Positions 10,638 through 52,600 of a stretch of DNA of 64,000 nt are shown piece by piece. The position numbers and the translations under genes are program-made. Source of the DNA: Iphione sp. A-MEVVRFRX5. Lineage: Eukaryota. The DNA lies in contig OZ320315.1 of assembly GCA_976226885.1 (NCBI GenBank), positions 109,430,001-109,494,000 on the forward strand, in the 5' to 3' direction. Under the pieces are notes generated by a model, which was not told the origin of the DNA, searched no databases, and saw only the letters and a program-made list of their open reading frames with translations. Each line of letters begins with the position of its first letter. Position 1 is the stretch's first letter.

Positions 10638-12719
10638 ATACACTATAGACTAATCTGAGCAGCCATATGACTCAACAACTTTTGCAAGGTAAAAATACCT
10701 AAGAATACCTATTTCTTTTTTATCTCAAACATTATACTCATACCTGTGAGGTGTCATCAAGGTTGTAAAAGCCCTCTCACAACTGGTTAATATCATTGAG
10801 GCTTTTAGTGCTGAAAACACATGGCGAAGTGTTCTCTAGCAAAGTGTTATATGCAACACCTTCTCTGGTTAGTTGATGATGAAAAACAGGCTGTCACGCC
10901 ATCCAATAATAATGTTACATGACACAATTTAGACTGAGAGTGGCTTATTTTAGTGAATTGTTTTAACAGCTTAACCTAACTACATATTATGATCTTTTTT
11001 ACTGGAAGAATAATAATGATACAATAGGAAGTGTGTGACTGTCCAATTGGTGTATTCTTGACCACATTATGCCAGAGACAGCTACATTTAGACAGATGAC
11101 TACACCACCGCCATCTGTCTGTAGTTCACAATATTAGATTCACTTTATTCCCACAGAGGGGTGTTAGGTCAGTAGATGCATCTGAGGGTAGTTTGCTGAG
11201 ATCTTTTTCAAAAAGGGGTCTTAAACTTTCCTGTTATCCAGTATATTGTTCTTATTTGTATTTAAAGGGCTTTAAGTCAATGTGAAGGGTTATGATCCAG
11301 GTGCTGTGCAAAGCATACACAGATCCCTGTAGTATGGTTGGTAAGCATTGTTACAATTACAATAGTCATTGTGATCTAGCAATATGGGATTGTTCACCCT
11401 TCTCTTTGATGCCTACACAATCATTTATAACATACTTTTGTTCGAATGAGGCTCTGGTAAGGTATAAACAATAATCTGCTAAAGTACCATTATGCAGGCA
11501 ATATATTCTGCACATTTTTCCTGGATGATTAAAGTTGATATCTTTGATAGTGATATATGTATTATTATGGATCTTTGGTGATCAAAACAGGTGAAGGTTA
11601 TCCATTTATGATGTGAAAATTCTTAAATGTCACATTCAGATGTTGTGATCTAGTCTGAAAAGGAAATAACATTTTTTTAGGTGACCCTTTGAGCAAATGG
11701 TGTAAGTGACCTGTATCATGCAACTCTTAGCCGCAGTATTGCAGTATGCAATAAACATTCAGTTCTTGCCCCCTTCTTCCATTGTTGATCTTTGTCACAA
11801 AACATTGCCTTCACTACTGAACTATCAACAGCTATGATGTTCCAACTGAGGGCTGGTGGCACAGTATGGTACAAAATGGTTGCCTTATAGGCTACATGTG
11901 TAAGCTACAGAATGACAGAGGAAAAGGATGATATGGAGAGCGAAAATCTTTAAGAAAAATTAAAAGAGAATAAGAATAAAGCAATGTTCCATTAAGAGGG
12001 ATGGAATGTATGGAATGCAAGGAATGGCAATATGTAAAATAGGCATTGGCAAAATATAAGGTAGAGACTCATGAAAAACTACTGTTAAACTTAACATAGC
12101 ATAGTAATCAACAACTTATCCTACTTATGATGCCACTACCAGTATTTCACATAATCCTCCTTTTGCTTTTGAATAAATTGCAAAGAAACCCCCTTCATCA
12201 TGTTTCCTTGAATCTGAGGCACCTAGCCGAGTTTTACCAACGAGGAACTGATACTTGTCTCAGGTAATGTAAGCTTGAGAGCTTGGCTACTGTACTCCAA
12301 GCTTTAGGTCACGGCCATAGCTTCAGGTTATACCCATGCTATTCTAGAGAAGTACTCTACTATGGATTCCGGGTCTCTGCCTTGCCCATCTACCAGTGTG
12401 GGGCCTAAACATTACCCTCCCCAAGATGGTCAGACAGCCTATGATAAATTAGGTAATGAGCATAAAAAAATGAACTGGGAAAGGTTTTGATGAGTCCCAG
12501 GGTACAAATGTGTAGTTCCACTTTATTAAAATAGCAGTTAAACAAGCAGCAAAACAGTTGTGTCCACTAAAGCTGAGGAAACCGCCCCAATGTTATCACA
12601 AAAGAACAGAAGGCAACACAACAGTGACTATGATTTGGCAGATGTCGGTACTAGGTTGACTATGTTGATCACATCAGCAATTTTATTTGTACAATTGTAC
12701 TTCTCCTGCCTAGGGAAAT

Positions 12720-13817
12720 AAAGGCAGGATCACGAGAATTTCAAGTGCAGAAGTTATAAAAGAGCATCTGACGAAAGGTTTAAGAGGGAACTTTTAGAAA
12801 TTAATTGGACTCCCTACTATAACAGTAATAGTGTAGTATATATGGTTGAATTTTTGGAGAGTGTACTGTACAAGGTTTTTGATAAGGTTTGTCCATACAT
12901 ATCGATGAGAAAGAAATTGTATGAACCTGGAGTTGATAAAAAGCTGAAAAATTTGATACAAGATAAACATATGGCATATATTGCCCACAAACAAAAGGGT
13001 AGTTTGGAGACAAAACTAATATATTGTGTGAGTAAATATAAAGTACGGTCATACATAAAGAAAAAGAAGTATGTTTATTTCTCTAGTACGTTTGAGAAAT
13101 ATAAAACCTTGCCGAAGTGCTTCTGGAAACAGATAAAAGAGACAATTGTTCCAAATAAGAAAAAAACAGACAAAAACCAACTCACATTAAGAGATGGAGA
13201 TCGAGTACTATCTGGTGAAATGGCTATAAATTATATAAATGACTACTTTGTTAATATTGGTATAAAACTGCAGCGTGAGTTTAAATCAGAGGGTGGTAAT
13301 GATGCATTGCCAGAATCAAATTGTACATTTGCCTGGAGGGAAGTTACTGAGACAGAGATAAAGAAATTAATATTGGAAATTAAGGATGGTAAATCTTGTA
13401 ATATTGGTGATTTGTGCACAAAATGGGTAAAACGATGTCTTTTATTACTTGTTGAACAGGTACAAGCATTATGTAATTTATCCCTGAGAACCAATATGTT
13501 TCCAGATAATTTGAAAACGGGAAAAGTAATACCATTGTTTAAAGGGGGAGATCCTCTCCTAGCCAGTAATTATAGGCCTATATGTATATTATCTGTATTG
13601 TCAAAAATCTTAGAAAAATGTGTTGCTAGCCAACTATCCGCCTATCTGGAAAATAATGCATTGCTCTCAGATAGTCAGCACGGGTTCAGAAAGTCAAGAA
13701 GTACTGCTACTGCCTCTGTAAATTTTGTAAATGCAATATATCAGGCTTGGAATCTAAAGGAAGTTGTGGCAGCTATATTCGTCGATTGTAAAAAAACCTT
13801 CGACAGTGTGAACCATA
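12720..13817 (+). mobile_element. CR1/L2-type LINE ORF2, 5' half (linker plus RT N-terminus), interrupted by a DNA transposon
   Basis: ORF 12842-13831: FPDNLKTGKVIPLFKGGD...NYRPICILSVLSKILEK, QHGFRKSRST, FVDCKKTFDSVNH. Upstream RSYKRASDERFKRELLEINW is in the same frame. The 5' boundary is approximate. Confidence 0.88.
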
Positions 13818-14735
13818 CACTGAAAAAATAAAGTTGTCATGGACTTGTCTCTAGTAACAAGTTTTGGCTTGTCCTGTTGACGGTCATACAATGTACAAGT
13901 TTAGCATTGTCACTCAAAGTTTATGACAAGCGTGATTGTCATAAACTTGATGATGTGACAACTGTAGAATTGTCATAATAATAAACTAAACTAGTCATAA
14001 AGTTGTCTCTAGTGACAAGTTTTGCATTGTTATATTGACGGTCATACAATGTACAAGTTTAGCATTGTCATTGAAAGTTTATGACTAATAGGTTGTCATA
14101 AACTTGTCTAAGTAAGTACTTTATCCTTGTCATAATAAGGAGAGAATAAAAACAAGCAAAATTCAGGTAATTCAAATACAGTTTATTCAGAGAAGTTTAT
14201 CAGCTTTGATCCTATTTATATTAACAGATGGTTCCAAACCCCTTCAATAGAGTACCTCAGTCAGCTTAGGTCAATACACTGAAAAAATAAAGTTGTCATG
14301 GACTTGTCTCTAGTAACAAGTTTTGGCTTGTCCTGTTGACGGTCATACAATGTACAAGTTTAGCATTGTCACTCAAAGTTTATGACAAGCGTGATTGTCA
14401 TAAACTTGATGATGTGACAACTGTAGAATTGTCATAATAATAAACTAAACTAGTCATAAAGTTGTCTCTAGTGACAAGTTTTGCATTGTTATATTGACGG
14501 TCATACAATGTACAAGTTTAGCATTGTCATTGAAAGTTTATGACTAATAGGTTGTCATAAACTTGTCTAAGTAAGTACTTTATCCTTGTCATAATAAGGA
14601 GAGAATAAAAACAAGCAAAATTCAGGTAATTCAAATACAGTTTATTCAGAGAAGTTTATCAGCTTTGATCCTATTTATATTAACAGATGGTTCCAAACCC
14701 CTTCAATAGAGTACCTCAGTCAGCTTAGGTCAATA
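13818..14735 (+). repeat. Two tandem copies of the 459-bp left arm of the transposon
   Basis: 13818-14276 and 14277-14735 look identical by eye; each starts CACTG and ends ...GGTCAATA. Confidence 0.95.
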
Positions 14736-14737
14736 CA

Positions 14738-14781
14738 TTTCACCCCTGAGGAAGGCCAACTAGATGCCGAAATGTCGGGAA
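14738..14781 (+). ncRNA. Minimal type-I hammerhead ribozyme motif (PLE-associated); also at 18226-18269 and 21714-21757
   Basis: TTTCACCC-CTGAGGA-A-GGC-CAACTAGAT-GCC-GAAA-TGTC-GGGAA: CUGANGA and GAAA cores, helix II GGC/GCC, helix I CCC/GGG, short helix III (ATGT instead of the usual palindromic ACGT), cleavage triplet GUC. Such motifs are established for Penelope pLTRs. Confidence 0.72.
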
Positions 14782-14846
14782 CTTTGTAACACAGGATAAA
14801 GGTGATGGTGTGTCATTAGAAATGGTGTTCCTAAAAGGGTACATAA

Positions 14847-15147
14847 TGTAGTGTGCGCATGTAATAAGAGCGTATAATGCTAGAAGGATGGTTGGTCCGT
14901 GAGAACGGTCCGTAACACAATCCGCGATCCGTGATAGGATACAGTCCGTGACGACTTCCGCACTGGTAGAGGTACTGCGTAGTAGGGGTACTTTGCAGAT
15001 TGTTTATTTGCTACGCATAAAGCAGACGTCTAGACATCCTATTTTTAGTAACTCTTATGTAATGCTGTCATATATAAACCCATGTTTTCTGGAATAAACA
15101 GACCCTTTCTCTTTGCTCGCTAGAGAGAGACCATTCCATGCACAACA
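14847..15147 (+). mobile_element. 301-bp LTR-like dispersed repeat inside the cargo (also in units 2 and 3)
   Basis: TGTAGTG...CACAACA ends and an AATAAA near the 3' end; a diverged copy of the same length lies at 51529-51827 (-). No TSD found. Confidence 0.45.
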
Positions 15148-15836
15148 ATTTAGTGTATATTGGAGTGAAACTTATATTCTACTTTTGTCAAGATTATTTT
15201 ACTCAAATCCGTTGACTTCTTATTTCTCTCTAAGCTAGTCACGTTACAATTGTATAATGTTTGAACCAAGTATAAATGCATAGCCACTGCACAATAAGGT
15301 AACGTTATGGTAGTATGAGATAACATTATTCCATAATATTCAGATAACACTCTAGCACAAGGGGTACTGGGATAATGTTATATTATATGGTTTATTGGTT
15401 CATCTATAGTGTACAGATAGAAATACTTGAACTAAAGCCTTACTACGAAGTACTATAAGTGGTGAAAAAAACTTTTGATGAGCAGGTACTCATGTTCTTT
15501 GTATCAATGTTAAGCAGAACTAGTCTTATAAAACAGTGTAAAGCCATAATAAAGAATAAACATAAAAAGACTTACCCTAGTAGGATCTCAACTCATAACA
15601 AGGGAAATGATTTGATAACTCTGATAGAGAAATAGATTTGCATTCTTCTTGCTGTGCAATAACTGAAGTTCTCATCATTAGGAAAAGGAGAACTACCACA
15701 AAATAAATGAGAACACAAAGATATATATATCATGTGGCCACACAGAAGGGAAGAGTTGGATAAGTTCATAAACCACCTATAAGTAAGAGATCCAAACATC
15801 ACCTTTTCCTGCTAACATTTCAACAATAAAGCAACT

Positions 15837-17066
15837 CTTACGAAACTAGTATTAACAAACAACACCCTAAAATTTGAAAACAAAGTGTATCTGCAAACCC
15901 GGGGCACAGCCATGGGAACCAAAATGGCCCCCATCTATGCCAACATATTCATAGACCATCTAAAAAGAAAACTAATTGAACAAGGAAACATTCGACCGAG
16001 AATCTGGATGTGATTTATAGATGACATATTTGCAATCTATAGATGCACAGAAGATGAACTTATAGAGACCTTGAATCAATACAACAATTACCACCAAACC
16101 ATCAAATTCACATTTGAACACAGCACGAAAGAAGTCCATTATCTTGATACAACCATCTATGTAGATAACAATATGTGTTAACAAAGCAAGTTGTACACCA
16201 AACCCACAGACTCACACCAATACCTACATTATTCATCATATCACCCCAGACATCAAAAAAGGTCTACAGCATACTCAAAGGCAGTGTGGATCAGAATGAT
16301 CTGCAGCGAATACAGTGAATTCAACAAATCTAGCCAAGATCTGCTAAAATACCTTACCCTCCAAAATCACCCACATAGACACACAAAGCATGAAATGAAC
16401 TGGGCTAGAACAATAGACAGAGAAAGCTTGTTCCGACAAACAGTCAAACAAAACAAGGAGATCATCCCCTTTGTGATACAATACAACCCGCACAACACTA
16501 GGGTTCTAACACACCTATGCACAGCACAAAATTACCACACAGAGATCCCTGAGGACTCCAATTTCAACAAAGAAAAAATGATGATTGTTTATAAGCGAAG
16601 TAGCCACTTACGGGACATACTCACAGCATCTGAATTTCCAAGAACAAACACAAGACACTGATGTTCAACCTGCATGAGGATGTCATGCAGAATTTGCCCT
16701 CAGATCATCACCACAACATACGTCCGCTTGAGTGACAAAAGAAAGAAAATATTTGGATAAAATACCTGCATCACAAACAATGTGATATACAGCATCACCT
16801 GCCCAGTCTGTGGCCTACATTATATAGGAGAAACTGGACAGTCAATGTGAGAATAACTGTGCGAACACAAGTACCAAATACAGATCAGAAATCATGACTT
16901 ACTGGTCACCCAACACTGCATTGACGATGATGTACAGTCCCATGAAATCGTATGCACCATCTTAAACAATTCAGCATGAGATAAAAATGAACGACCACAG
17001 TTGGAGGAAGCATGGATTAGGAATCTTTCAACACCACATCTGCATGGACTGAACTTAAAACTTTAA
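15837..17066 (+). mobile_element. Penelope-like element (Neptune-like) RT plus Cys linker plus GIY-YIG endonuclease, pseudogenised, copy 1
   Basis: One frame with internal stops: YLQTRGTAMGTKMAPIYANIF, WM*FIDDIF, TIKFTFE, LYTKPTDSHQYLHYSSYHP, CSTC..SCRIC linker, NVIYSITCPVCGLHYIGETG (GIY-YIG), EAWI..L...GLN. Confidence 0.9.
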
Positions 17067-19324
17067 ACACTGTGACATAACGGTGTTACTAGGAGTGGTC
17101 GTTACGTCATGACATCACCTTGAACATTGCAGAAGCTGCACTAACAAGCACCTCAGTATGAGAAAATATGCCTACGGTGCCTTCGTGGCAGCCTCATCAA
17201 AACTACAACAACCCTAACCGCAATCAAACGAGATGGCAGACAACAGCAACAGCAACAACATCCAGTGTGGCTTATTTACACATTGGGTCACAAGTAACCG
17301 AGTACTCCTCCTTCATTTAAATAAGAAGCACCATGAACCAAAGAAAACACCGGGGGTATGGGGTAAGTACCTGTGTTACCTGTGTACTAACTCATACACA
17401 TGATACGGTTCTCTTAAATGACATTCATGTAAAACACATAACTAAGATCATCCGATACCAACTGTGATCCTGGGACCATAATTACACCAAAAAAGACCTA
17501 CTAAACTAAAAAAGACCTACACCATGGAGGGACGACAAAATCAACCCAACAAATGTTAGATTCTGTATCAAATACTTGAATCGCTCTTCTAGGGACAGCC
17601 CATCCACCTGGAAAACTGGAGACAACATACCATACAGCAGGTTACCCATAGGAGAGATCGTCGCGATGTATCGCGATCGCACGTTTTCGTAAATCTAAGG
17701 CACTAGATATCATTTAAGAGCAAAACCAATGCAACAGCAGTGTAGAGGAGGTTCTTAGCTTCATTTTGGTATAAAGCACTTCTTTCTAGGACCATTTTAA
17801 AGGTATGTGATGAGTTAATATGTTCACTCACCTCAGACAAGTGGCTCCTAACTCCACAACTGTTTTTCAAGGTATGCTGTTGTTGAATTTGAATGACATG
17901 TTTTTCTTTCTTTCACTGATCTCAGGAATACCTTAATAGGGAGTTAAGTAATTCTACTAATAATACTAATATATTTTATGGTTGTATATGTATTGATTTC
18001 CCTGAAATAGTGTGCTTTTAGATTCTGTCACTTTGCTTTTAAAATAACTGTTGTAGTGAGACCTAAAGGACGATTTGACAAGTGTGTGACATGTTTATGA
18101 CAAGGCAATATTGTCAGTTTGACTATACCATTGTCATTCATCATTTAGATTGTCAAAAACTCAATGACAACCCTAAAAATTGTCATATAGACAATGCCAG
18201 GACAAGTTAATTTTTTCAGTGTACATTTCACCCCTGAGGAAGGCCAACTAGATGCCGAAATGTCGGGAACTTTGTAACACAGGATAAAGGTGATGGTGTG
18301 TCATTAGAAATGGTGTTCCTAAAAGGGTACATAATGTAGTGTGCGCATGTAATAAGAGCGTATAATGCTAGAAGGATGGTTGGTCCGTGAGAACGGTCCG
18401 TAACACAATCCGCGATCCGTGATAGGATACAGTCCGTGACGACTTCCGCACTGGTAGAGGTACTGCGTAGTAGGGGTACTTTGCAGATTGTTTATTTGCT
18501 ACGCATAAAGCAGACGTCTAGACATCCTATTTTTAGTAACTCTTATGTAATGCTGTCATATATAAACCCATGTTTTCTGGAATAAACAGACCCTTTCTCT
18601 TTGCTCGCTAGAGAGAGACCATTCCATGCACAACAATTTAGTGTATATTGGAGTGAAACTTATATTCTACTTTTGTCAAGATTATTTTACTCAAATCCGT
18701 TGACTTCTTATTTCTCTCTAAGCTAGTCACGTTACAATTGTATAATGTTTGAACCAAGTATAAATGCATAGCCACTGCACAATAAGGTAACGTTATGGTA
18801 GTATGAGATAACATTATTCCATAATATTCAGATAACACTCTAGCACAAGGGGTACTGGGATAATGTTATATTATATGGTTTATTGGTTCATCTATAGTGT
18901 ACAGATAGAAATACTTGAACTAAAGCCTTACTACGAAGTACTATAAGTGGTGAAAAAAACTTTTGATGAGCAGGTACTCATGTTCTTTGTATCAATGTTA
19001 AGCAGAACTAGTCTTATAAAACAGTGTAAAGCCATAATAAAGAATAAACATAAAAAGACTTACCCTAGTAGGATCTCAACTCATAACAAGGGAAATGATT
19101 TGATAACTCTGATAGAGAAATAGATTTGCATTCTTCTTGCTGTGCAATAACTGAAGTTCTCATCATTAGGAAAAGGAGAACTACCACAAAATAAATGAGA
19201 ACACAAAGATATATATATCATGTGGCCACACAGAAGGGAAGAGTTGGATAAGTTCATAAACCACCTATAAGTAAGAGATCCAAACATCACCTTTTCCTGC
19301 TAACATTTCAACAATAAAGCAACT

Positions 19325-20554
19325 CTTACGAAACTAGTATTAACAAACAACACCCTAAAATTTGAAAACAAAGTGTATCTGCAAACCCGGGGCACAGCCA
19401 TGGGAACCAAAATGGCCCCCATCTATGCCAACATATTCATAGACCATCTAAAAAGAAAACTAATTGAACAAGGAAACATTCGACCGAGAATCTGGATGTG
19501 ATTTATAGATGACATATTTGCAATCTATAGATGCACAGAAGATGAACTTATAGAGACCTTGAATCAATACAACAATTACCACCAAACCATCAAATTCACA
19601 TTTGAACACAGCACGAAAGAAGTCCATTATCTTGATACAACCATCTATGTAGATAACAATATGTGTTAACAAAGCAAGTTGTACACCAAACCCACAGACT
19701 CACACCAATACCTACATTATTCATCATATCACCCCAGACATCAAAAAAGGTCTACAGCATACTCAAAGGCAGTGTGGATCAGAATGATCTGCAGCGAATA
19801 CAGTGAATTCAACAAATCTAGCCAAGATCTGCTAAAATACCTTACCCTCCAAAATCACCCACATAGACACACAAAGCATGAAATGAACTGGGCTAGAACA
19901 ATAGACAGAGAAAGCTTGTTCCGACAAACAGTCAAACAAAACAAGGAGATCATCCCCTTTGTGATACAATACAACCCGCACAACACTAGGGTTCTAACAC
20001 ACCTATGCACAGCACAAAATTACCACACAGAGATCCCTGAGGACTCCAATTTCAACAAAGAAAAAATGATGATTGTTTATAAGCGAAGTAGCCACTTACG
20101 GGACATACTCACAGCATCTGAATTTCCAAGAACAAACACAAGACACTGATGTTCAACCTGCATGAGGATGTCATGCAGAATTTGCCCTCAGATCATCACC
20201 ACAACATACGTCCGCTTGAGTGACAAAAGAAAGAAAATATTTGGATAAAATACCTGCATCACAAACAATGTGATATACAGCATCACCTGCCCAGTCTGTG
20301 GCCTACATTATATAGGAGAAACTGGACAGTCAATGTGAGAATAACTGTGCGAACACAAGTACCAAATACAGATCAGAAATCATGACTTACTGGTCACCCA
20401 ACACTGCATTGACGATGATGTACAGTCCCATGAAATCGTATGCACCATCTTAAACAATTCAGCATGAGATAAAAATGAACGACCACAGTTGGAGGAAGCA
20501 TGGATTAGGAATCTTTCAACACCACATCTGCATGGACTGAACTTAAAACTTTAA
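19325..20554 (+). mobile_element. Penelope-like RT-GIY-YIG pseudogene, copy 2
   Basis: Copy 1 shifted by +3488, with the same stops. Confidence 0.9.
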
Positions 20555-22812
20555 ACACTGTGACATAACGGTGTTACTAGGAGTGGTCGTTACGTCATGA
20601 CATCACCTTGAACATTGCAGAAGCTGCACTAACAAGCACCTCAGTATGAGAAAATATGCCTACGGTGCCTTCGTGGCAGCCTCATCAAAACTACAACAAC
20701 CCTAACCGCAATCAAACGAGATGGCAGACAACAGCAACAGCAACAACATCCAGTGTGGCTTATTTACACATTGGGTCACAAGTAACCGAGTACTCCTCCT
20801 TCATTTAAATAAGAAGCACCATGAACCAAAGAAAACACCGGGGGTATGGGGTAAGTACCTGTGTTACCTGTGTACTAACTCATACACATGATACGGTTCT
20901 CTTAAATGACATTCATGTAAAACACATAACTAAGATCATCCGATACCAACTGTGATCCTGGGACCATAATTACACCAAAAAAGACCTACTAAACTAAAAA
21001 AGACCTACACCATGGAGGGACGACAAAATCAACCCAACAAATGTTAGATTCTGTATCAAATACTTGAATCGCTCTTCTAGGGACAGCCCATCCACCTGGA
21101 AAACTGGAGACAACATACCATACAGCAGGTTACCCATAGGAGAGATCGTCGCGATGTATCGTGATCGCACGTTTTCGTAAATCTAAGGCACTAGATATCA
21201 TTTAAGAGCAAAACCAATGCAACAGCAGTGTAGAGGAGGTTCTTAGCTTCATTTTGGTATAAAGCACTTCTTTCTAGGACCATTTTAAAGGTATGTGATG
21301 AGTTAATATGTTCACTCACCTCAGACAAGTGGCTCCTAACTCCACAACTGTTTTTCAAGGTATGCTGTTGTTGAATTTGAATGACATGTTTTTCTTTCTT
21401 TCACTGATCTCAGGAATACCTTAATAGGGAGTTAAGTAATTCTACTAATAATACTAATATATTTTATGGTTGTATATGTATTGATTTCCCTGAAATAGTG
21501 TGCTTTTAGATTCTGTCACTTTGCTTTTAAAATAACTGTTGTAGTGAGACCTAAAGGACGATTTGACAAGTGTGTGACATGTTTATGACAAGGCAATATT
21601 GTCAGTTTGACTATACCATTGTCATTCATCATTTAGATTGTCAAAAACTCAATGACAACCCTAAAAATTGTCATATAGACAATGCCAGGACAAGTTAATT
21701 TTTTCAGTGTACATTTCACCCCTGAGGAAGGCCAACTAGATGCCGAAATGTCGGGAACTTTGTAACACAGGATAAAGGTGATGGTGTGTCATTAGAAATG
21801 GTGTTCCTAAAAGGGTACATAATGTAGTGTGCGCATGTAATAAGAGCGTATAATGCTAGAAGGATGGTTGGTCCGTGAGAACGGTCCGTAACACAATCCG
21901 CGATCCGTGATAGGATACAGTCCGTGACGACTTCCGCACTGGTAGAGGTACTGCGTAGTAGGGGTACTTTGCAGATTGTTTATTTGCTACGCATAAAGCA
22001 GACGTCTAGACATCCTATTTTTAGTAACTCTTATGTAATGCTGTCATATATAAACCCATGTTTTCTGGAATAAACAGACCCTTTCTCTTTGCTCACTAGA
22101 GAGAGACCATTCCATGCACAACAATTTAGTGTATATTGGAGTGAAACTTATATTCTACTTTTGTCAAGATTATTTTACTCAAATCCGTTGACTTCTTATT
22201 TCTCTCTAAGCTAGTCACGTTACAATTGTATAATGTTTGAACCAAGTATAAATGCATAGCCACTGCACAATAAGGTAACGTTATGGTAGTATGAGATAAC
22301 ATTATTCCATAATATTCAGATAACACTCTAGCACAAGGGGTACTGGGATAATGTTATATTATATGGTTTATTGGTTCATCTATAGTGTACAGATAGAAAT
22401 ACTTGAACTAAAGCCTTACTACGAAGTACTATAAGTGGTGAAAAAAACTTTTGATGAGCAGGTACTCATGTTCTTTGTATCAATGTTAAGCAGAACTAGT
22501 CTTATAAAACAGTGTAAAGCCATAATAAAGAATAAACATAAAAAGACTTACCCTAGTAGGATCTCAACTCATAACAAGGGAAATGATTTGATAACTCTGA
22601 TAGAGAAATAGATTTGCATTCTTCTTGCTGTGCAATAACTGAAGTTCTCATCATTAGGAAAAGGAGAACTACCACAAAATAAATGAGAACACAAAGATAT
22701 ATATATCATGTGGCCACACAGAAGGGAAGAGTTGGATAAGTTCATAAACCACCTATAAGTAAGAGATCCAAACATCACCTTTTCCTGCTAACATTTCAAC
22801 AATAAAGCAACT

Positions 22813-24042
22813 CTTACGAAACTAGTATTAACAAACAACACCCTAAAATTTGAAAACAAAGTGTATCTGCAAACCCGGGGCACAGCCATGGGAACCAAAA
22901 TGGCCCCCATCTATGCCAACATATTCATAGACCATCTAAAAAGAAAACTAATTGAACAAGGAAACATTCGACCGAGAATCTGGATGTGATTTATAGATGA
23001 CATATTTGCAATCTATAGATGCACAGAAGATGAACTTATAGAGACCTTGAATCAATACAACAATTACCACCAAACCATCAAATTCACATTTGAACACAGC
23101 ACGAAAGAAGTCCATTATCTTGATACAACCATCTATGTAGATAACAATATGTGTTAACAAAGCAAGTTGTACACCAAACCCACAGACTCACACCAATACC
23201 TACATTATTCATCATATCACCCCAGACATCAAAAAAGGTCTACAGCATACTCAAAGGCAGTGTGGATCAGAATGATCTGCAGCGAATACAGTGAATTCAA
23301 CAAATCTAGCCAAGATCTGCTAAAATACCTTACCCTCCAAAATCACCCACATAGACACACAAAGCATGAAATGAACTGGGCTAGAACAATAGACAGAGAA
23401 AGCTTGTTCCGACAAACAGTCAAACAAAACAAGGAGATCATCCCCTTTGTGATACAATACAACCCGCACAACACTAGGGTTCTAACACACCTATGCACAG
23501 CACAAAATTACCACACAGAGATCCCTGAGGACTCCAATTTCAACAAAGAAAAAATGATGATTGTTTATAAGCGAAGTAGCCACTTACGGGACATACTCAC
23601 AGCATCTGAATTTCCAAGAACAAACACAAGACACTGATGTTCAACCTGCATGAGGATGTCATGCAGAATTTGCCCTCAGATCATCACCACAACATACGTC
23701 CGCTTGAGTGACAAAAGAAAGAAAATATTTGGATAAAATACCTGCATCACAAACAATGTGATATACAGCATCACCTGCCCAGTCTGTGGCCTACATTATA
23801 TAGGAGAAACTGGACAGTCAATGTGAGAATAACTGTGCGAACACAAGTACCAAATACAGATCAGAAATCATGACTTACTGGTCACCCAACACTGCATTGA
23901 CGATGATGTACAGTCCCATGAAATCGTATGCACCATCTTAAACAATTCAGCATGAGATAAAAATGAACGACCACAGTTGGAGGAAGCATGGATTAGGAAT
24001 CTTTCAACACCACATCTGCATGGACTGAACTTAAAACTTTAA
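22813..24042 (+). mobile_element. Penelope-like RT-GIY-YIG pseudogene, copy 3
   Basis: Copy 1 shifted by +6976, with the same stops. Confidence 0.9.
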
Positions 24043-25199
24043 ACACTGTGACATAACGGTGTTACTAGGAGTGGTCGTTACGTCATGACATCACCTTGAA
24101 CATTGCAGAAGCTGCACTAACAAGCACCTCAGTATGAGAAAATATGCCTACGGTGCCTTCGTGGCAGCCTCATCAAAACTACAACAACCCTAACCGCAAT
24201 CAAACGAGATGGCAGACAACAGCAACAGCAACAACATCCAGTGTGGCTTATTTACACATTGGGTCACAAGTAACCGAGTACTCCTCCTTCATTTAAATAA
24301 GAAGCACCATGAACCAAAGAAAACACCGGGGGTATGGGGTAAGTACCTGTGTTACCTGTGTACTAACTCATACACATGATACGGTTCTCTTAAATGACAT
24401 TCATGTAAAACACATAACTAAGATCATCCGATACCAACTGTGATCCTGGGACCATAATTACACCAAAAAAGACCTACTAAACTAAAAAAGACCTACACCA
24501 TGGAGGGACGACAAAATCAACCCAACAAATGTTAGATTCTGTATCAAATACTTGAATCGCTCTTCTAGGGACAGCCCATCCACCTGGAAAACTGGAGACA
24601 ACATACCATACAGCAGGTTACCCATAGGAGAGATCGTCGCGATGTATCGCGATCGCACGTTTTCGTAAATCTAAGGCACTAGATATCATTTAAGAGCAAA
24701 ACCAATGCAACAGCAGTGTAGAGGAGGTTCTTAGCTTCATTTTGGTATAAAGCACTTCTTTCTAGGACCATTTTAAAGGTATGTGATGAGTTAATATGTT
24801 CACTCACCTCAGACAAGTGGCTCCTAACTCCACAACTGTTTTTCAAGGTATGCTGTTGTTGAATTTGAATGACATGTTTTTCTTTCTTTCACTGATCTCA
24901 GGAATACCTTAATAGGGAGTTAAGTAATTCTACTAATAATACTAATATATTTTATGGTTGTATATGTATTGATTTCCCTGAAATAGTGTGCTTTTAGATT
25001 CTGTCACTTTGCTTTTAAAATAACTGTTGTAGTGAGACCTAAAGGACGATTTGACAAGTGTGTGACATGTTTATGACAAGGCAATATTGTCAGTTTGACT
25101 ATACCATTGTCATTCATCATTTAGATTGTCAAAAACTCAATGACAACCCTAAAAATTGTCATATAGACAATGCCAGGACAAGTTAATTTTTTCAGTGTA

Positions 25200-26497
25200 G
25201 TATTCTGTTGAAAAAATTATATGGAATGGGTATTAAAGACCAAATAGTATGGTTTGCAAGCTATCTAAAAAATAGATCGATCCAAACTTATGGTAATGGC
25301 TATATTAGTGAAAAAGCATTAATTAACTGTGGAGTCCCTCAGGGGTCCACACTTGGACCGATTCTCTTTGCAATTTTTATTAATGATCTACCAATTAAAT
25401 TGGGAATTACTAACACACTTTTATATGCAGATGACACTGTGTCTTTTGTCACTGGGACGACAGTGACTCAGGTGCAAGAAAAATTGCAAATACTATGTGA
25501 TAAACTATTTTTATGGTTCAAAGAGAACAAAATTTGTATCAATGTCAAAAAGACTTAAATAGTAGTGTTTAACTACAAAGACAATGGTGGAATATATAAG
25601 AATATGGGATGTCATCTTGGAAATAGCCAACTTGAAATAGTTGACAAGTACAATTATTTGGGAGTAGTAATGGACGAACGTTTAAGTTTTAAGATATTCT
25701 TAAAGTCGAAAATTAATAGTATCTCCTGGAAACTATGGTATCTATACAAAATCAGGGAATATATTCCAAGAACAATGATGTGTCTGTTAATTAAAACGTT
25801 TATTGTTCCAGTACTTGAATATGGAATAATATTGTGTTCAGCAAAAAACAAAATTCTGGTTAGATTGGTTAACACTTTTGGGTATCGGACAAGCAAAATT
25901 CTGGGAATATTGAAGAAAGATATATATGGTATGTTAAATATGCAAGATATTTTTTGTTGGCGTGAAATTCAACTTGTATGTTTAATGTGGTCGGAACAAA
26001 GTAAATATACCCCACTGAGCACGAGAAGTAGCGTTAGATCTAGCAAGCAACATATGGTTAAGAATCCTAGGGTGCATATGGAAAAATTTCGACATTCGCC
26101 CATGTACAATAGTATATTCATATGGAACAGTCTTCCAAACTGGGTGGTAAATACTGACAAATTGAGGATATTGAAAACAAATCTTAAAAAGCACTATGAA
26201 AAATTCAGGAGAGAAAACTTTAAAGTTGTCTAAAGTTGTCTAATCAAGGTAACAAACATTATATTGATGAGTTGTGTAGTTATCTTAACTACTATGGTTG
26301 TCAAGTTTTTTATTGTCAATTTTTATTTAAATTATTAATGTTTGAACTATGTCTTTTATTAATGAAACTTTCAACTTAAATCTATGTGCTTATAATTTGG
26401 AGAGTTACCTAAGTAATATCTCATTGCTTTAACTATACAAATTGCCTATGCATAACTACAGAGGATATGGTTATATTCATTTCATTTCATCTCATAA
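25200..26497 (+). mobile_element. CR1/L2-type LINE ORF2, 3' half (RT core to 3' end)
   Basis: GVPQGSTLGPILFAIFINDL, LYADDT, YNYLGV; one in-frame stop at 25556-25558. Joins the 5' half in frame (VNH|SILLKKL) when 13818-25199 is removed. A (CATTT)n-like run near 26478-26497 is a tentative 3' tail. Confidence 0.85.
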
Positions 26498-26859
26498 TGT
26501 TCGTGTACAAAGATCTGAAGACCAATGTACAAAAAATTGTATGTCTCACCCTTCAGAAATAAACATGCAAATACAAATACAAAAATACAGAATATACCTA
26601 ATATATACATGTGTATTAAATATAAAGGGAATCAACCCAGACATCACCCTGGTAGGTCTTCAGAGTTCTGACAGGAGACAAATGTCAGCCAATTTCTCTA
26701 TTATCTTTTAGTTGTGCTCCTCTATTATGATGTCACAATTAGTAAAAAAAATCCATCCGTGCCACAAGTTGTTTCAACCTTTTGGCAACATTTCTTATTG
26801 GCAAGAATTTGTTGAAGAAAGGTTATTTCCTGCTATTAGGGAAGGCCAAAGGTGATTAT

Positions 26860-27330
26860 ATAAGGTAGGAAGTCGAAGAATGCAATTAAATATCCGAAAT
26901 TTCTTGGGATCAATTAACACTGAACCAATAGTTTTCAAAGATAACAATGGTGACAATATTGATAATCAAACTCTGTCAAATATATAAATAGTCATTATGT
27001 GAGTATAGAGAGATAATCAGAGAAAAAGCTGGACTAAAAGATATGTACTCGTATCACTGTGGAATGTAATACATCACTGCTTAAGGCAGGTAAAGAGAGA
27101 AAGTATGTGAAGTTAGTATCCAGATTTAAGAATGAGAAGCCATCTGGGCTGCTCAATCTAAACACTATGGTGACCAAGATGACTTCCTGGAAGAAGCAAG
27201 TAAAAAAGTTAGATCAATATCATTCGCCACAAATACGTTTCTTAATGACCTCAAAGCAACCACAGTCACTCCTATACATAAGGGAGGGTCAAAAGCTATG
27301 GTGCCTAATTACCATCCAGTGGAAATGACC
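26860..27330 (+). mobile_element. Degraded CR1/L2-type LINE RT N-terminal fragment
   Basis: KLVSRFKNEKPSGLLNLNT, and in another frame FLNDLKATTVTPIHKGGSKAMVPNYHPV (compare KVTPIHKGG...NYRPIS). Confidence 0.6.
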
Positions 27331-49617: not shown

Positions 49618-52600
49618 ATGTCTACCCCAAAGCCAGCCCTCTCAGTTTCCCAGACTAGCTCTTTGTTTGATGAAAAGGTTTTCATCAGAGTAAAAAATCT
49701 GAAACCTAACCAAGCAGTTACCATAGCAACATGTCTTAAGGAGTCAGGACAGAAGTGGACAGCACATGCACACTATCTGGTATCTGAGGATGGGAGTGTG
49801 GACCTGTGTAAAAATGCCTCACTTGGGGGTAGTTATAAAGGTAAATCAGACATATTGTCATTCTGCATTCAATGAAGAATGACACTAATTTGCTATGGCT
49901 TTGACATTTTTATTGCTAAACTTAGTAGCAGATCTCCATTCCTTAAGTAGCAATTTCTTTTTACCTAGGTCACCTGGCTAATTGCAATTGAAAAATCCAG
50001 CCACAGTATAGGTTATCTTCCCATGTTTACGACCGCATTTGCAGTCATTATGTTATTTCATACACTTCACATTTGTACTCAATAAAGCGGATTGCTCAGA
50101 TAACGAAGAAGTTCCCTTTGTTCATATTTGCTATGTTTATATATATGTATAGTCACTGAGTAGTTGTATGCAATATTTGTGATTTATTATTATTTATTTA
50201 TTCAACATTTATTCCCCAGGTGTGGATCCCATGGGTCTTTTCTGGAGTATTTCTATGCCCAATAATATGACTGCTAGACTTGTCAAACATGATGTCACCA
50301 CTCCTCTCATGATATCAGTGTCAGTTTTAGAAGATCATATCGAACCAACACACTCTGACACAGATGTACCACTGGTACAGGCAAATATTGCAAGATACTA
50401 CATGGGAGAGCATGTCACAAGAGTTCCTGTGCGAGAGGGAAGAATCAGAGGGACGCTATTTGTACCGAAAGGTATGGATATTTATTAGATCTCTTATTTT
50501 TCACAGCAAACACTTAATATGTTGCTAAGCTAATGCATTTCTTTAACACATTTTTCAAAGTGGCATGACTGTACACCTATTTGTAGGCCAGACATCAGCT
50601 TCACATATGGACGTTTTCAAGAGTGCTTTCAATGTGGACAAAACTGTTTAAACATTAAACCCAGCCATTCAATCATATCAAGATATGGACTAAGACTATC
50701 TCTATATTATTGTTTCTTCCCCTTTGGACTTTGCCTGTCTAGATATTATCTGAACCTTGTGGACATACTTCATTATGTGTGATATGTAATTGAACGGTCA
50801 AATATTCTGGAGAGATTGATGATGAATGCTAGAAATAGTATGATTTCTGACAAATTTAACCAATATTGTATAGTCTTAGCTTTAGGGCCATAATTATTCC
50901 ATTACAAGTTTGATAAATCAAAATAACTCTCTGACTGCATAGCTTATTATTTAATAAACAGAACTACTAAAAAACCAAATGTGCTACTGGCACTCCTTCT
51001 ACATTTGACTGATTCCACCAATAGATGTACCAACATGTATTCTCTGGGATGGTGTTTTTGTGTTGTAAATCAAATTTTAATTAATATTTTACTTCTGTTT
51101 TGATAGGGCTTGGTCTAGGGGGTATGAGGAAGCTGTAACAATTTTTTTAGCACTGTAAAATGATGTGTTCTTGTAGTTTTTAATTGTCCCGGAGAATACC
51201 GCTGGTACATCTATTGGTGGAATTAGTCATTTACATCGTGCTATTGCTCTCTATTTCAGAACACAAGCACTCTGTTACTTATCTGAAGAAACAATAATCA
51301 TCATTGCTTCTTGTTAAATAGTGCCAATCTAAAATTAAGATATCACACCAAAAATAATAAATCATCAAATGTATCATTCCATCCTGTGAAAAACATCCCT
51401 AAGGGATGAAAAGTTGGAATGAAATATTATCTTATCCTGTACTTATACTGTTATGAACACTTTTCTGTCTATAGAAATTCAAGTGGGGTGTTTTAACGAC
51501 ATTGACCATAATAAGCCTTTAGCCACATTGCTTGCATGGTGATAACTTTACTAATGCTAGTGAACGATTTATTGTGAGCTTTAAGTTTCAAGTGCTTTAT
51601 TGACCTCTCTGCACAAAGATTTACAGAGCTGAATAGGATGTCTAGACGCTTGCTTCTACATAGTAAACAAACAATCCGCGAGGTACCCCTACTATGCAGC
51701 GTATATACAAGTCCGCTAGGTGTCACAGATTTCACCCTTTCACGGATCACAGACTCTATCATGGACCGCTCTCACGGACCGACCAACCTTCTAGCATTGT
51801 ATGCTCTTATTACATTCACACACTACATTTCTAAGCTAGTGATAAAGTGTGCACAATAGGTTTTTTGTGTGACTTTTACTATTCTAGGATCACCAGGTCA
51901 GCAGTTTCCAGGAATCATTGACCTCTATGGTTTATCTGGTAGTATTAAGAAGTCTCGTGCTGCCCTGTTAGCCTCAAGAGGCTTTCTCACTCTGTCTTTG
52001 GCATACATGAACTATGAGGATCTACCAAAGACAACAAATGCTATTGACCTTGAATATTTTGAAGTAAGTTGAATCTTCTTGCAAACACCCCTTTATGTTT
52101 TATCAGGGAATGGTAGCTTTGTTTGTTACTGTTCAGCTTTTATTACCATGAAATTCATTACATGAAATTTTTTTGGATATGAGTTACACTCTGAATTTTA
52201 AAAAAATGGTATATAGTGTTGATTTCAATAGCATACATACACCATAATCTTGTATTTCTAATTAATTGAATTACCTCCATCAAACATAAAGATCTACACA
52301 AGAAACAGCTATCAACTTAGCAAAACTTCTCTGTTTCTAATTTGAAAAACAAATAATTATTCAAAACAAATTTTAGTATTATATATTCAATACTTGCTCT
52401 TCTTACAGCTTATCCATTATGAAAGATTCCAGTATATTAATTGACCATGGATATTTATATTTATATTATGTATATAAAAATCTACTTTTAGGAGGCTGTG
52501 AATTGGTTAAACAAGCACCACAGTGTCCTCAAAGACCACCTTGGTGTGATAGGTCTATCTCTGGGAGCAGAGATAGCCATTTTGATCAGCACAATTACAG

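What the first reader, a model, noticed from the sequence alone, without database searches (positions are those of the whole stretch)
14277..18221. DNA transposon acting as a vehicle for a dead Penelope retroelement (Pack-CACTA-like cargo in an animal genome)
Between CACTG and CAGTG ends lie a hammerhead motif, an LTR-like repeat and a Neptune-like RT-GIY-YIG. All three cargo copies share the same stop codons, so the retroelement was already dead when it was amplified, and it was copied together with the TIR arms. Removing the whole array restores the host LINE frame (GTG AAC CAT AGT ATT CTG = VNHSIL), which shows one precise TA-duplicating insertion. Cargo capture is established for plant CACTA and MULE elements. 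A TIR element spreading a ribozyme-bearing PLE this way would be unusual.
Basis: partly seen in the sequence, partly recalled or inferred. Interest (0 to 1): 0.75.

Follow-up and report, generated by a model that had tools for sequence, protein, structure and literature searches.

The report
CACTA-like transposon carrying dead Penelope fragment
A non-coding jumping gene of the cut-and-paste CACTA type has a broken Penelope retroelement stuck inside it and has jumped into a copy of itself, which is a neat but ordinary case of one mobile element hitch-hiking in another.

Summary
Window 14277-18221 is one copy of a non-autonomous TIR element. Its ends are CACTG...CAGTG, it has a 2-bp target duplication and its arms are rich in TTGTCA repeats. 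The family has at least 370 arms in this genome, which fits animal CACTA/CMC elements.

The interior is nested transposon debris:
- a 5'-truncated Penelope-like element holding the C-terminal half of RT, a GIY-YIG domain and a 3' tail, with 7 in-frame stops.

The "hammerhead" is only two short core boxes, and Rfam finds nothing there.

The three "cargo copies" are a local array, L-L-XR-XR-XR, not dispersed copies. Every junction lies at an element end plus TA. That is what insertion of the composite into an internal TA of a sister copy predicts, with one further unequal exchange. The array sits precisely in a LINE RT frame.

No other full loaded copy exists in the genome. However, two near-identical deletion derivatives on another chromosome keep two exact 20-mers of this Penelope ORF, so a loaded ancestor was mobile. 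A second subfamily spreads a different Penelope fragment.

Acquisition looks like ordinary nested retrotransposition, not Pack-type capture. No reads were available to check the array.

The parts
13568..13815 (+). Host LINE reverse-transcriptase ORF, left of the insertion
   Evidence: Pfam RVT_1 E=3.4e-12, profile positions 8-83. The translation ends ...KKTFDSVN.
13816..13817 (.). Left copy of the outer 2-bp target duplication (TA)
   Evidence: The junction reads GAACCA-TA-CACTG, and the same TA recurs at 25198-25199.
13818..14276 (+). L copy 1: the left part of the outer element, ending in the internal TA that served as target
   Evidence: 100% identical to 14277-14735.
14277..18221 (+). One complete composite element (the inner copy): left arm, backbone, nested repeats, Penelope fragment, right arm
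   Evidence: Ends CACTG/CAGTG, flanked by TA at 14275-76 and 18222-23.
14277..14597 (+). Left arm shared with the whole TIR family
   Evidence: At least 374 candidates in the genome, with 92-98% identity in the best 40. It holds 10 TTGTCA/TGACAA motifs against 0.22 expected.
14746..14772 (+). Hammerhead-like core boxes (CTGAGGA ... GAAA), unconfirmed
   Evidence: No Rfam hit. Chance expectation is 0.39 per window. The G of the GAAA box is A in the C2 relatives.
14783..15547 (+). Unclassified dispersed repeat (14783-14844 plus 15251-15547), interrupted by the solo LTR
   Evidence: The two halves are contiguous at several other loci, for example C1:146188742-146189105. At least 1,430 candidates.
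14845..15250 (+). Solo LTR of an unrelated LTR-retrotransposon family
   Evidence: At least 3,615 candidates at 95-97% identity. Elsewhere the ends are TGTAG...TTACA, with a PBS-like or polypurine tract beside them, 4-bp target duplications, and pairs about 9-11 kb apart. It is absent from the C2 relatives.
15558..15831 (+). Backbone segment shared with another member of the TIR family
   Evidence: 90% identical to C2:37436193-37436463, which lies downstream of a family left arm. The similarity stops at 15831.
15832..17650 (+). 5'-truncated, dead Penelope-like element: C-terminal half of RT, linker, GIY-YIG and 3' tail
   Evidence: The stop-free pieces map colinearly to positions 351-409, 412-464, 468-623 and 666-692 of a 765-position profile built from 17 full-length relatives. 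Those relatives carry RVT_1 plus a C-terminal GIY-YIG. There are 7 in-frame stops and no frameshift. The only close copies are the three local ones.
17651..18221 (+). Right arm shared with the TIR family
   Evidence: At least 388 candidates. Family alignments start at 17648-17665. The last 150 bp hold 7 TTGTCA/TGACAA motifs.
14736..25199 (+). Three tandem XR units of 3,488 bp each (14736-18223, 18224-21711, 21712-25199)
   Evidence: The only differences are 17674 C>T in unit 2 and 15119 G>A in unit 3.
25200..25531 (+). Host LINE reverse-transcriptase ORF, right of the insertion
   Evidence: Pfam RVT_1 E=3.5e-11, profile positions 87-179.

Best explanation
The unit 14277-18221 is a non-autonomous animal CACTA/CMC-type DNA transposon. 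Over time its interior collected nested insertions: a dispersed repeat, later a solo LTR, and a Penelope-like retroelement. The Penelope copy arrived by its own retrotransposition, so it was 5'-truncated and dead on arrival.

Because both arms stayed intact, the family's transposase, supplied in trans, could still move the whole composite. One copy inserted into the TA at 14734-35 of a sister copy and duplicated that TA, giving L-L-XR-XR. One unequal exchange between XR units, or a second event of the same kind, added the third XR. The compound lies in a LINE RT gene with a 2-bp TA duplication.

Abortive gap repair of a loaded ancestor also produced short derivatives, and these jumped to another chromosome.

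Shown: the anatomy, the junctions, the family properties, the derivatives and the Penelope identity. Inferred: how the Penelope copy was acquired, the order of events, and the source of the transposase.
For: - Family: invariant CACTG/CAGTG ends. 25 of 26 complete elements have matching 2-bp duplications (TA 9, AA 6, TT 5, CA 2, TG 2, CT 1). TTGTCA repeats are enriched in both arms. There are hundreds of arms and many empty elements of 1.0-1.6 kb.
- Junctions: L|L reads GGTCAA-TA-CACTG, L|XR reads GGTCAA-TA-CATTTC, and XR|XR reads CAGTG-TA-CATTTC. This is exactly what insertion with a 2-bp duplication at that TA predicts.
- The host LINE frame is restored once the array is removed.
- Derivatives at C2:43419283-43420908 and C2:43304465-43306090 are 99.94% identical to each other and have unrelated flanks and duplications CA and TG. 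Their 53-bp filler contains exact 20-mers equal to 16195-16214 and 16242-16261 of the Penelope ORF. The nearest free Penelope copy is only 72% identical.
- The Penelope fragment starts at profile position 351 of 765 and runs through the ORF end plus about 0.5 kb that also aligns to the free copy. That is the shape of a 5'-truncated retrotransposition product.
- Its 5' edge (15832) coincides with the end of backbone similarity to another family member.
Against: - There are 2 L parts but 3 XR parts, so one nested insertion alone is not enough.
- No sequencing run could be listed, so the array rests on the assembly alone.
- No target duplication of 6 bp or more flanks the Penelope fragment, and no exact empty site could be fetched, so retrotransposition is inferred and not shown.
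- No autonomous partner or transposase was tied to these ends. The PF02992 search was uninformative.
Confidence: 0.68

Rival explanations
1. Pack-type capture: the transposon acquired the Penelope piece and the other interior segments at the DNA level, by template switching during gap repair after excision, as Pack-CACTA and Pack-MULE elements do in plants.
For: - No target duplication flanks the Penelope fragment.
- The interior is a mosaic of unrelated pieces.
- The C2 derivatives show that abortive gap repair with filler does operate in this family.
- The 4.68-kb subfamily carries a further 830-bp segment holding a 169-aa ORF. That segment is 71-78% similar to two other loci and may be captured DNA.
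Against: - Both Penelope fragments seen in the family are 3' portions in one orientation. That is the signature of 5'-truncated retrotransposition, not of random capture.
- The solo LTR and the split repeat are plainly nested insertions.
- The cargo is transposon sequence, not host exons.
Confidence: 0.15
2. The array is not a transposition product. It arose from local tandem duplication by slippage at TA microhomology, or the assembler mis-expanded a repeat.
For: - The copies are 99.97-100% identical.
- The L and XR counts are unequal.
- There is no read support.
- A 5-bp microhomology, ATACA, lies at the L|L boundary.
Against: - Two independent duplications would each have to begin or end exactly at an element terminus and also share the same internal breakpoint.
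- Each XR unit carries its own private substitution, which argues that the copies were resolved separately.
- The family is demonstrably active and makes 2-bp duplications.
Confidence: 0.1
3. The link between Penelope and this transposon family is not accidental. Either Penelope elements target this family, or their 3' parts give the transposon some benefit.
For: - Two, possibly three, unrelated Penelope fragments occur in different subfamilies, all in the L-to-R orientation.
- An earlier first-reader note of this scan mentions cargo of a CACTG element elsewhere that is shared with a hammerhead-tailed insert (unchecked).
Against: - Penelope relatives are numerous in this genome: at least 206 candidates for this one query.
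- Another family member holds a LINE endonuclease fragment instead.
- The insertion points differ between subfamilies.
- The fragments are dead.
Confidence: 0.07

Closest known systems
Animal CACTA / En-Spm (CMC: Chapaev-Mirage-CACTA) non-autonomous elements, e.g. ENS1_Cis of Ciona savignyi and the CMC-NA MITEs
   Same: Invariant 5'-CAC...GTG-3' ends and a 2-bp target duplication (PMC6004678; also Spongebob in PMC4298943). Here the ends are CACTG...CAGTG, the duplication is 2 bp in 25 of 26 elements, and subterminal repeats occur in both orientations.
   Different: This family, with a 321-bp left arm and a roughly 560-bp right arm, is not one I can name.
Pack-CACTA / Pack-MULE / Pack-TYPE elements of plants
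   Same: A non-autonomous TIR element that moves foreign DNA lying between intact arms (PMC6379663, PMC8903248, titles and abstracts). Abortive gap repair with filler is seen in this family too.
   Different: Pack-TYPE cargo is captured host gene fragments. Here the cargo is other transposons, and the Penelope piece has the shape of a retrotransposed, 5'-truncated insert.
Penelope-like elements (EN+ type, RT followed by a C-terminal GIY-YIG)
   Same: The stop-free pieces align colinearly with full-length proteins of about 770 aa that carry RVT_1 and then GIY-YIG.
   Different: About 46% of the ORF is missing at the 5' end, and there are 7 stops. There is no pseudo-LTR arrangement of its own, because the local tandem unit includes the transposon's right arm. 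No ribozyme was detected in its 3' tail.
Transposon self-insertion / nested MITE multimers (P-element self-insertions, PMC4744444; self-insertion of plant MITEs, PMC5172404)
   Same: One copy of an element lies inside another copy of the same element, and the family's own target duplication is found at the inner junctions.
   Different: The two copies are in direct orientation at an internal TA, and an extra XR unit is present, so the result looks like a tandem array.

Membership tests
CACTA / CMC superfamily | Termini 5'-CAC(T A/G) ... GTG-3' | tested here: met
   CACTG/CAGTG in all 26 complete elements and in about 90 single ends.
CACTA / CMC superfamily | Short target duplication of 2-3 bp (2 bp in animal CACTA, PMC6004678 and PMC4298943) | tested here: met
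   25 of 26 elements have matching 2-bp duplications of varied sequence.
CACTA / CMC superfamily | Multiple subterminal repeats in direct and inverted orientation | tested here: met
   The TTGTCA/TGACAA motif occurs 10 times in the left arm and 7 times in the right arm, against 0.2-0.4 expected. It occurs only twice in the 3,063-bp interior.
CACTA / CMC superfamily | Autonomous partner encoding a CMC-type DDE transposase with the same ends | tested here: inconclusive
   The PF02992 search of the genome gave nothing, but it gave nothing in the control genomes either. Earlier notes of this scan mention intact CACTA elements in this genome, unchecked.
Tc1/mariner | Target duplication strictly TA | tested here: not met
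   Only 9 of 25 duplications are TA. The rest are AA, TT, CA, TG and CT.
Pack-TYPE transposon | Cargo consists of captured host gene (exon) fragments | tested here: not met
   The cargo of this element is a dispersed repeat, a solo LTR and a Penelope fragment.
Penelope-like element | Penelope-type RT followed by a C-terminal GIY-YIG endonuclease | tested here: met
   phmmer found 2,686 relatives. Full-length ones have RVT_1 and then GIY-YIG. The pieces map colinearly to profile positions 351-692 of 765.
Penelope-like element | Hammerhead ribozyme in a pseudo-LTR | tested here: inconclusive
   No Rfam match at 14700-14860 or at 17050-17700 with E<=10. The genome-wide RF00163 search scored only 73 of about 160,000 candidates and had no positive control.
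Hammerhead ribozyme (type I) | Conserved core with helix II abutting the core, scored by a covariance model | tested here: not met
   No Rfam hit. A strict scan found none, and the candidate needs an unpaired A before a 3-bp helix II. The C2 relatives read AAAA where this copy reads GAAA.
Neptune clade of Penelope-like elements | Phylogenetic placement of the RT with named Neptune references | not tested
   No named reference sequences were at hand.

The most novel reading that the evidence does not exclude
This animal CACTA-like family repeatedly picks up 3' fragments of different Penelope-like elements, always in the same orientation, and spreads them. On this reading the link is not accidental. 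Either Penelope endonuclease favours sites in these elements, or the Penelope tails supply something useful to the transposon's transcripts. Self-insertion at an internal TA would then be a route by which such composites seed tandem arrays.
Probability: 0.1. Interest if true: 0.5.

Novelty: new member of a known kind. Interest (0 to 1): 0.3.

Why it matters
This is a well-resolved example, in an animal genome, of a retroelement fragment copied by DNA transposition and not by its own reverse transcription. It also shows a DNA transposon inserting into itself, which produces something that looks like a tandem array. That is a practical warning for repeat annotation: such composites inflate retroelement counts and mimic pseudo-LTR or satellite structures. 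The near-identical copies also show that the family was active very recently. None of this changes how these element classes are understood.

Tried and rejected
- Rfam scans of 12000-27000 (E<=1), 14700-14860 and 17050-17700 (E<=10) found no hammerhead, only chance-level matches to other families.
- The genome-wide RF00163 search was uninformative. It scored 73 of about 160,000 candidates and the controls were silent.
- The genome-wide PF02992 search was uninformative because the controls were silent.
- The look-up of sequencing runs listed no run, so read laying was not used and the array could not be checked on reads.
Three places therefore could not be read: the free Penelope copy at C11:58626008-58627732, the rest of the element at C2:37436192, and the middle 1.2 kb of the 4.68-kb elements.
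- Pfam on the individual stop-free Penelope pieces gave only a weak RVT_1 match (E=0.003). Identity was settled by phmmer and a profile instead.
- I first read 15711-15779 as a second Penelope 'thumb' fragment, but it did not match the profile, so I dropped it.
- No direct repeat of 6 bp or more flanks the Penelope fragment.
- Pfam on ORFs next to full-length copies of the LTR family gave nothing.
- tblastn of this element's Penelope pieces against the other family loci gave nothing, so the two Penelope cargos are not the same acquisition.
- The profile HMM was built from public full-length proteins and used for searching only.
Full report
**What is at the coordinates.** The window is G000:C4:109430001-109494000. 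Self-comparison shows a compound structure, not a single element. Reading left to right it is:
- the flank ...GAACCA;
- TA (13816-17);
- L copy 1 (13818-14276);
- L copy 2 (14277-14735), 100% identical to copy 1;
- three units of 3,488 bp, called XR here (14736-18223, 18224-21711, 21712-25199);
- the flank GTATTCTG....

The XR units differ only by 17674 C>T in unit 2 and 15119 G>A in unit 3. The finding's span, 14277-18221, is L copy 2 plus XR unit 1. It begins with CACTG and ends with CAGTG.

**Host site.** The left flank translates to a LINE reverse transcriptase ending in ...KKTFDSVN, and the right flank continues with ILLKKLYGMGI.... Pfam RVT_1 covers profile positions 8-83 on the left and 87-179 on the right. 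With one TA kept, the frame is continuous.

**The arms are a real transposon family.**
- The left arm (14277-14597) has at least 374 candidate matches in the genome. The right arm really starts near 17651-17661, not at about 18060, and has at least 388.
- Among the fetched loci, 26 complete elements of 1.0-1.6 kb all have CACTG/CAGTG ends. 25 of them have matching 2-bp target duplications: TA 9, AA 6, TT 5, CA 2, TG 2, CT 1. The duplication is thus 2 bp of varied sequence, which excludes a TA-specific Tc1/mariner element.
- The motif TTGTCA/TGACAA occurs 10 times in the left arm and 7 times in the last 150 bp of the right arm. Shuffles give 0.2-0.4, and the 3-kb interior has only 2.
- Ends of the form 5'-CAC...GTG-3' with a 2-bp duplication are what the literature gives for animal CACTA/CMC elements (PMC6004678; PMC4298943).
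- I could not tie a transposase to these ends. Membership therefore rests on structure alone.

**The interior is nested debris.**
- 14845-15250 matches at least 3,615 candidates at 95-97% identity. At other loci the same 406 bp has TGTAG...TTACA ends. It is followed by a primer-binding-site-like tract or preceded by a polypurine tract, has 4-bp target duplications, and comes in pairs about 9-11 kb apart. It is a solo LTR of an unrelated family.
- That LTR splits another dispersed repeat (14783-14844 plus 15251-15547, at least 1,430 candidates). The two halves of this repeat are contiguous elsewhere.
- 15558-15831 is backbone shared at 90% with another family member on C2.

**The Penelope part.**
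- One reading frame runs from 15816 to 17063, with seven in-frame stops and no frameshift.
- The 159-aa stop-free piece finds 2,686 relatives by phmmer. The full-length ones, about 770 aa, have RVT_1, then the region matching our piece, then GIY-YIG.
- A profile of 17 such proteins places our pieces colinearly at positions 351-409, 412-464, 468-623 and 666-692 of 765.
- The copy therefore lacks the first 46% or so of the ORF.
- Homology starts at about 15834, just where similarity to the C2 backbone ends.
- About 0.5 kb downstream of the ORF still aligns to the nearest free Penelope copy, C11:58626008-58627732, at 67-72%.
- A 5'-truncated copy with its 3' part present is the usual outcome of retrotransposition. 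No flanking duplication of 6 bp or more was found, so this step is inferred.

**The hammerhead.** The boxes CTGAGGA and GAAA, with a 3-bp stem between them, lie at 14746-14772.
- They sit in the backbone, about 1 kb upstream of the Penelope fragment, with two other repeats in between.
- Rfam reports nothing there even at E<=10, and nothing in the Penelope 3' tail.
- A relaxed motif scan expects 0.39 such sites per window by chance, and a strict scan finds none.
- The two closest relatives read AAAA where this copy reads GAAA.
- I have no positive control from this genome. The verdict is 'unconfirmed', not 'absent'.

**Was the loaded element ever moved?** Three lines of evidence say yes.

First, the junctions. 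L|L reads GGTCAA-TA-CACTG, L|XR reads GGTCAA-TA-CATTTC, and XR|XR reads CAGTG-TA-CATTTC. Insertion of a whole element into the TA at 14734-35 of another copy, with the family's 2-bp duplication, predicts exactly these strings and gives L-L-XR-XR. Two unrelated tandem duplications would each have to start or end at an element terminus and also share one internal breakpoint. The third XR needs one more step: an unequal exchange between XR units, a second insertion of an L-XR-XR compound, or a miscount by the assembler.

Second, two 1,625-bp elements on C2 (43419283-43420908 and 43304465-43306090).
- They are 99.94% identical to each other, have unrelated flanks, and have duplications CA and TG.
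- They match our element at 95-98% over 14276-14649, 14690-14844, 15245-15719 and 17648-18221, and they lack the solo LTR.
- Between the homologues of 15719 and 17648 they hold a 53-bp filler with two exact 20-mers, equal to 16195-16214 and 16242-16261 of the Penelope ORF.
- They must descend from a Penelope-loaded ancestor by internal deletion, as in abortive gap repair.
- They have transposed at least twice since then.

Third, a different subfamily of 4.68 kb (C15:40900708-40905389, C15:41513501-41518179, C11:46012006-46016683).
- These copies are 99.8-100% identical, and the two C15 copies, whose both ends were read, have duplications TA and AA. Two further copies are about 92% identical.
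- This subfamily carries another Penelope fragment, at profile positions 537-619 and 663-721.
- That fragment does not align with ours at the DNA level.

**What is not supported.**
- No other full copy of this cargo exists. For 15721-17070 the best non-local match is 72% identical. For 17071-17660 there are only four candidates in the genome: the three local copies and the free Penelope copy.
- The shared stop codons only reflect the near-identity of a very young local array.
- The cargo is transposon sequence, not host gene fragments. The comparison with Pack-CACTA holds for the transport of foreign DNA, not for how it was acquired.

**Limits.**
- No public run could be listed, so the array stands on the assembly alone.
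Several decisive neighbours could therefore not be read.

Noticed in passing
window 14837-15260: The solo LTR here lacks the family's usual 4-bp target duplication. Compared with the empty site in the C2 relatives (GGGTACAT|TGTATAATG), the insert is the LTR plus two extra bases on each side (AA...AT). Those are the bases found next to the LTR inside full elements. This could be a non-integrase insertion of an unprocessed LTR end, or a decayed duplication.
   Followed up: partly
L010/L053 (C15:40900708-40905389), L012/L058, L014: This is a 4.68-kb subfamily of the same transposon with three copies at 99.8-100% identity. It carries a different Penelope fragment. It also carries an 830-bp segment holding a 169-aa serine-rich ORF, which is 71-78% similar to C26:40454642-40455471 and C1:96944516-96945340. 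That segment may be captured DNA.
   Followed up: partly
L003 685-1131 (minus strand), C2:37436487-37439909: Another member of the family shares 14277-14699 and 15558-15831 with our element. Between those segments it holds a fragment that I read, from its sequence only, as a LINE endonuclease domain. Nested retroelement debris therefore seems common in this family.
   Followed up: no
C1:139405955-139410445 (only partly held as L019): This element has a family left arm, a stretch 67% similar to the second subfamily's Penelope region at 139409649-139410074, and the start of the right arm directly after it. It may be a third Penelope-bearing member.
   Followed up: no
window 15816-17063: The dead Penelope frame has seven stops (four TGA, three TAA) and not a single frameshift in 1.25 kb. 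The strand is 39% A and 16% G, with CpG observed/expected of 0.35. This is compatible with decay mainly by C-to-T and G-to-A transitions.
   Followed up: partly
window 13893-13967 and 14352-14426 (minus strand): The palindromic subterminal repeats of the left arm give a weak, sub-threshold match to the mir-458 hairpin model (23.8 bits against a gathering score of 59). This is most likely just the hairpin potential of the inverted TTGTCA repeats.
   Followed up: no
window 51632-51829: There is a diverged (78%) partial copy of the same LTR family on the minus strand.
   Followed up: no
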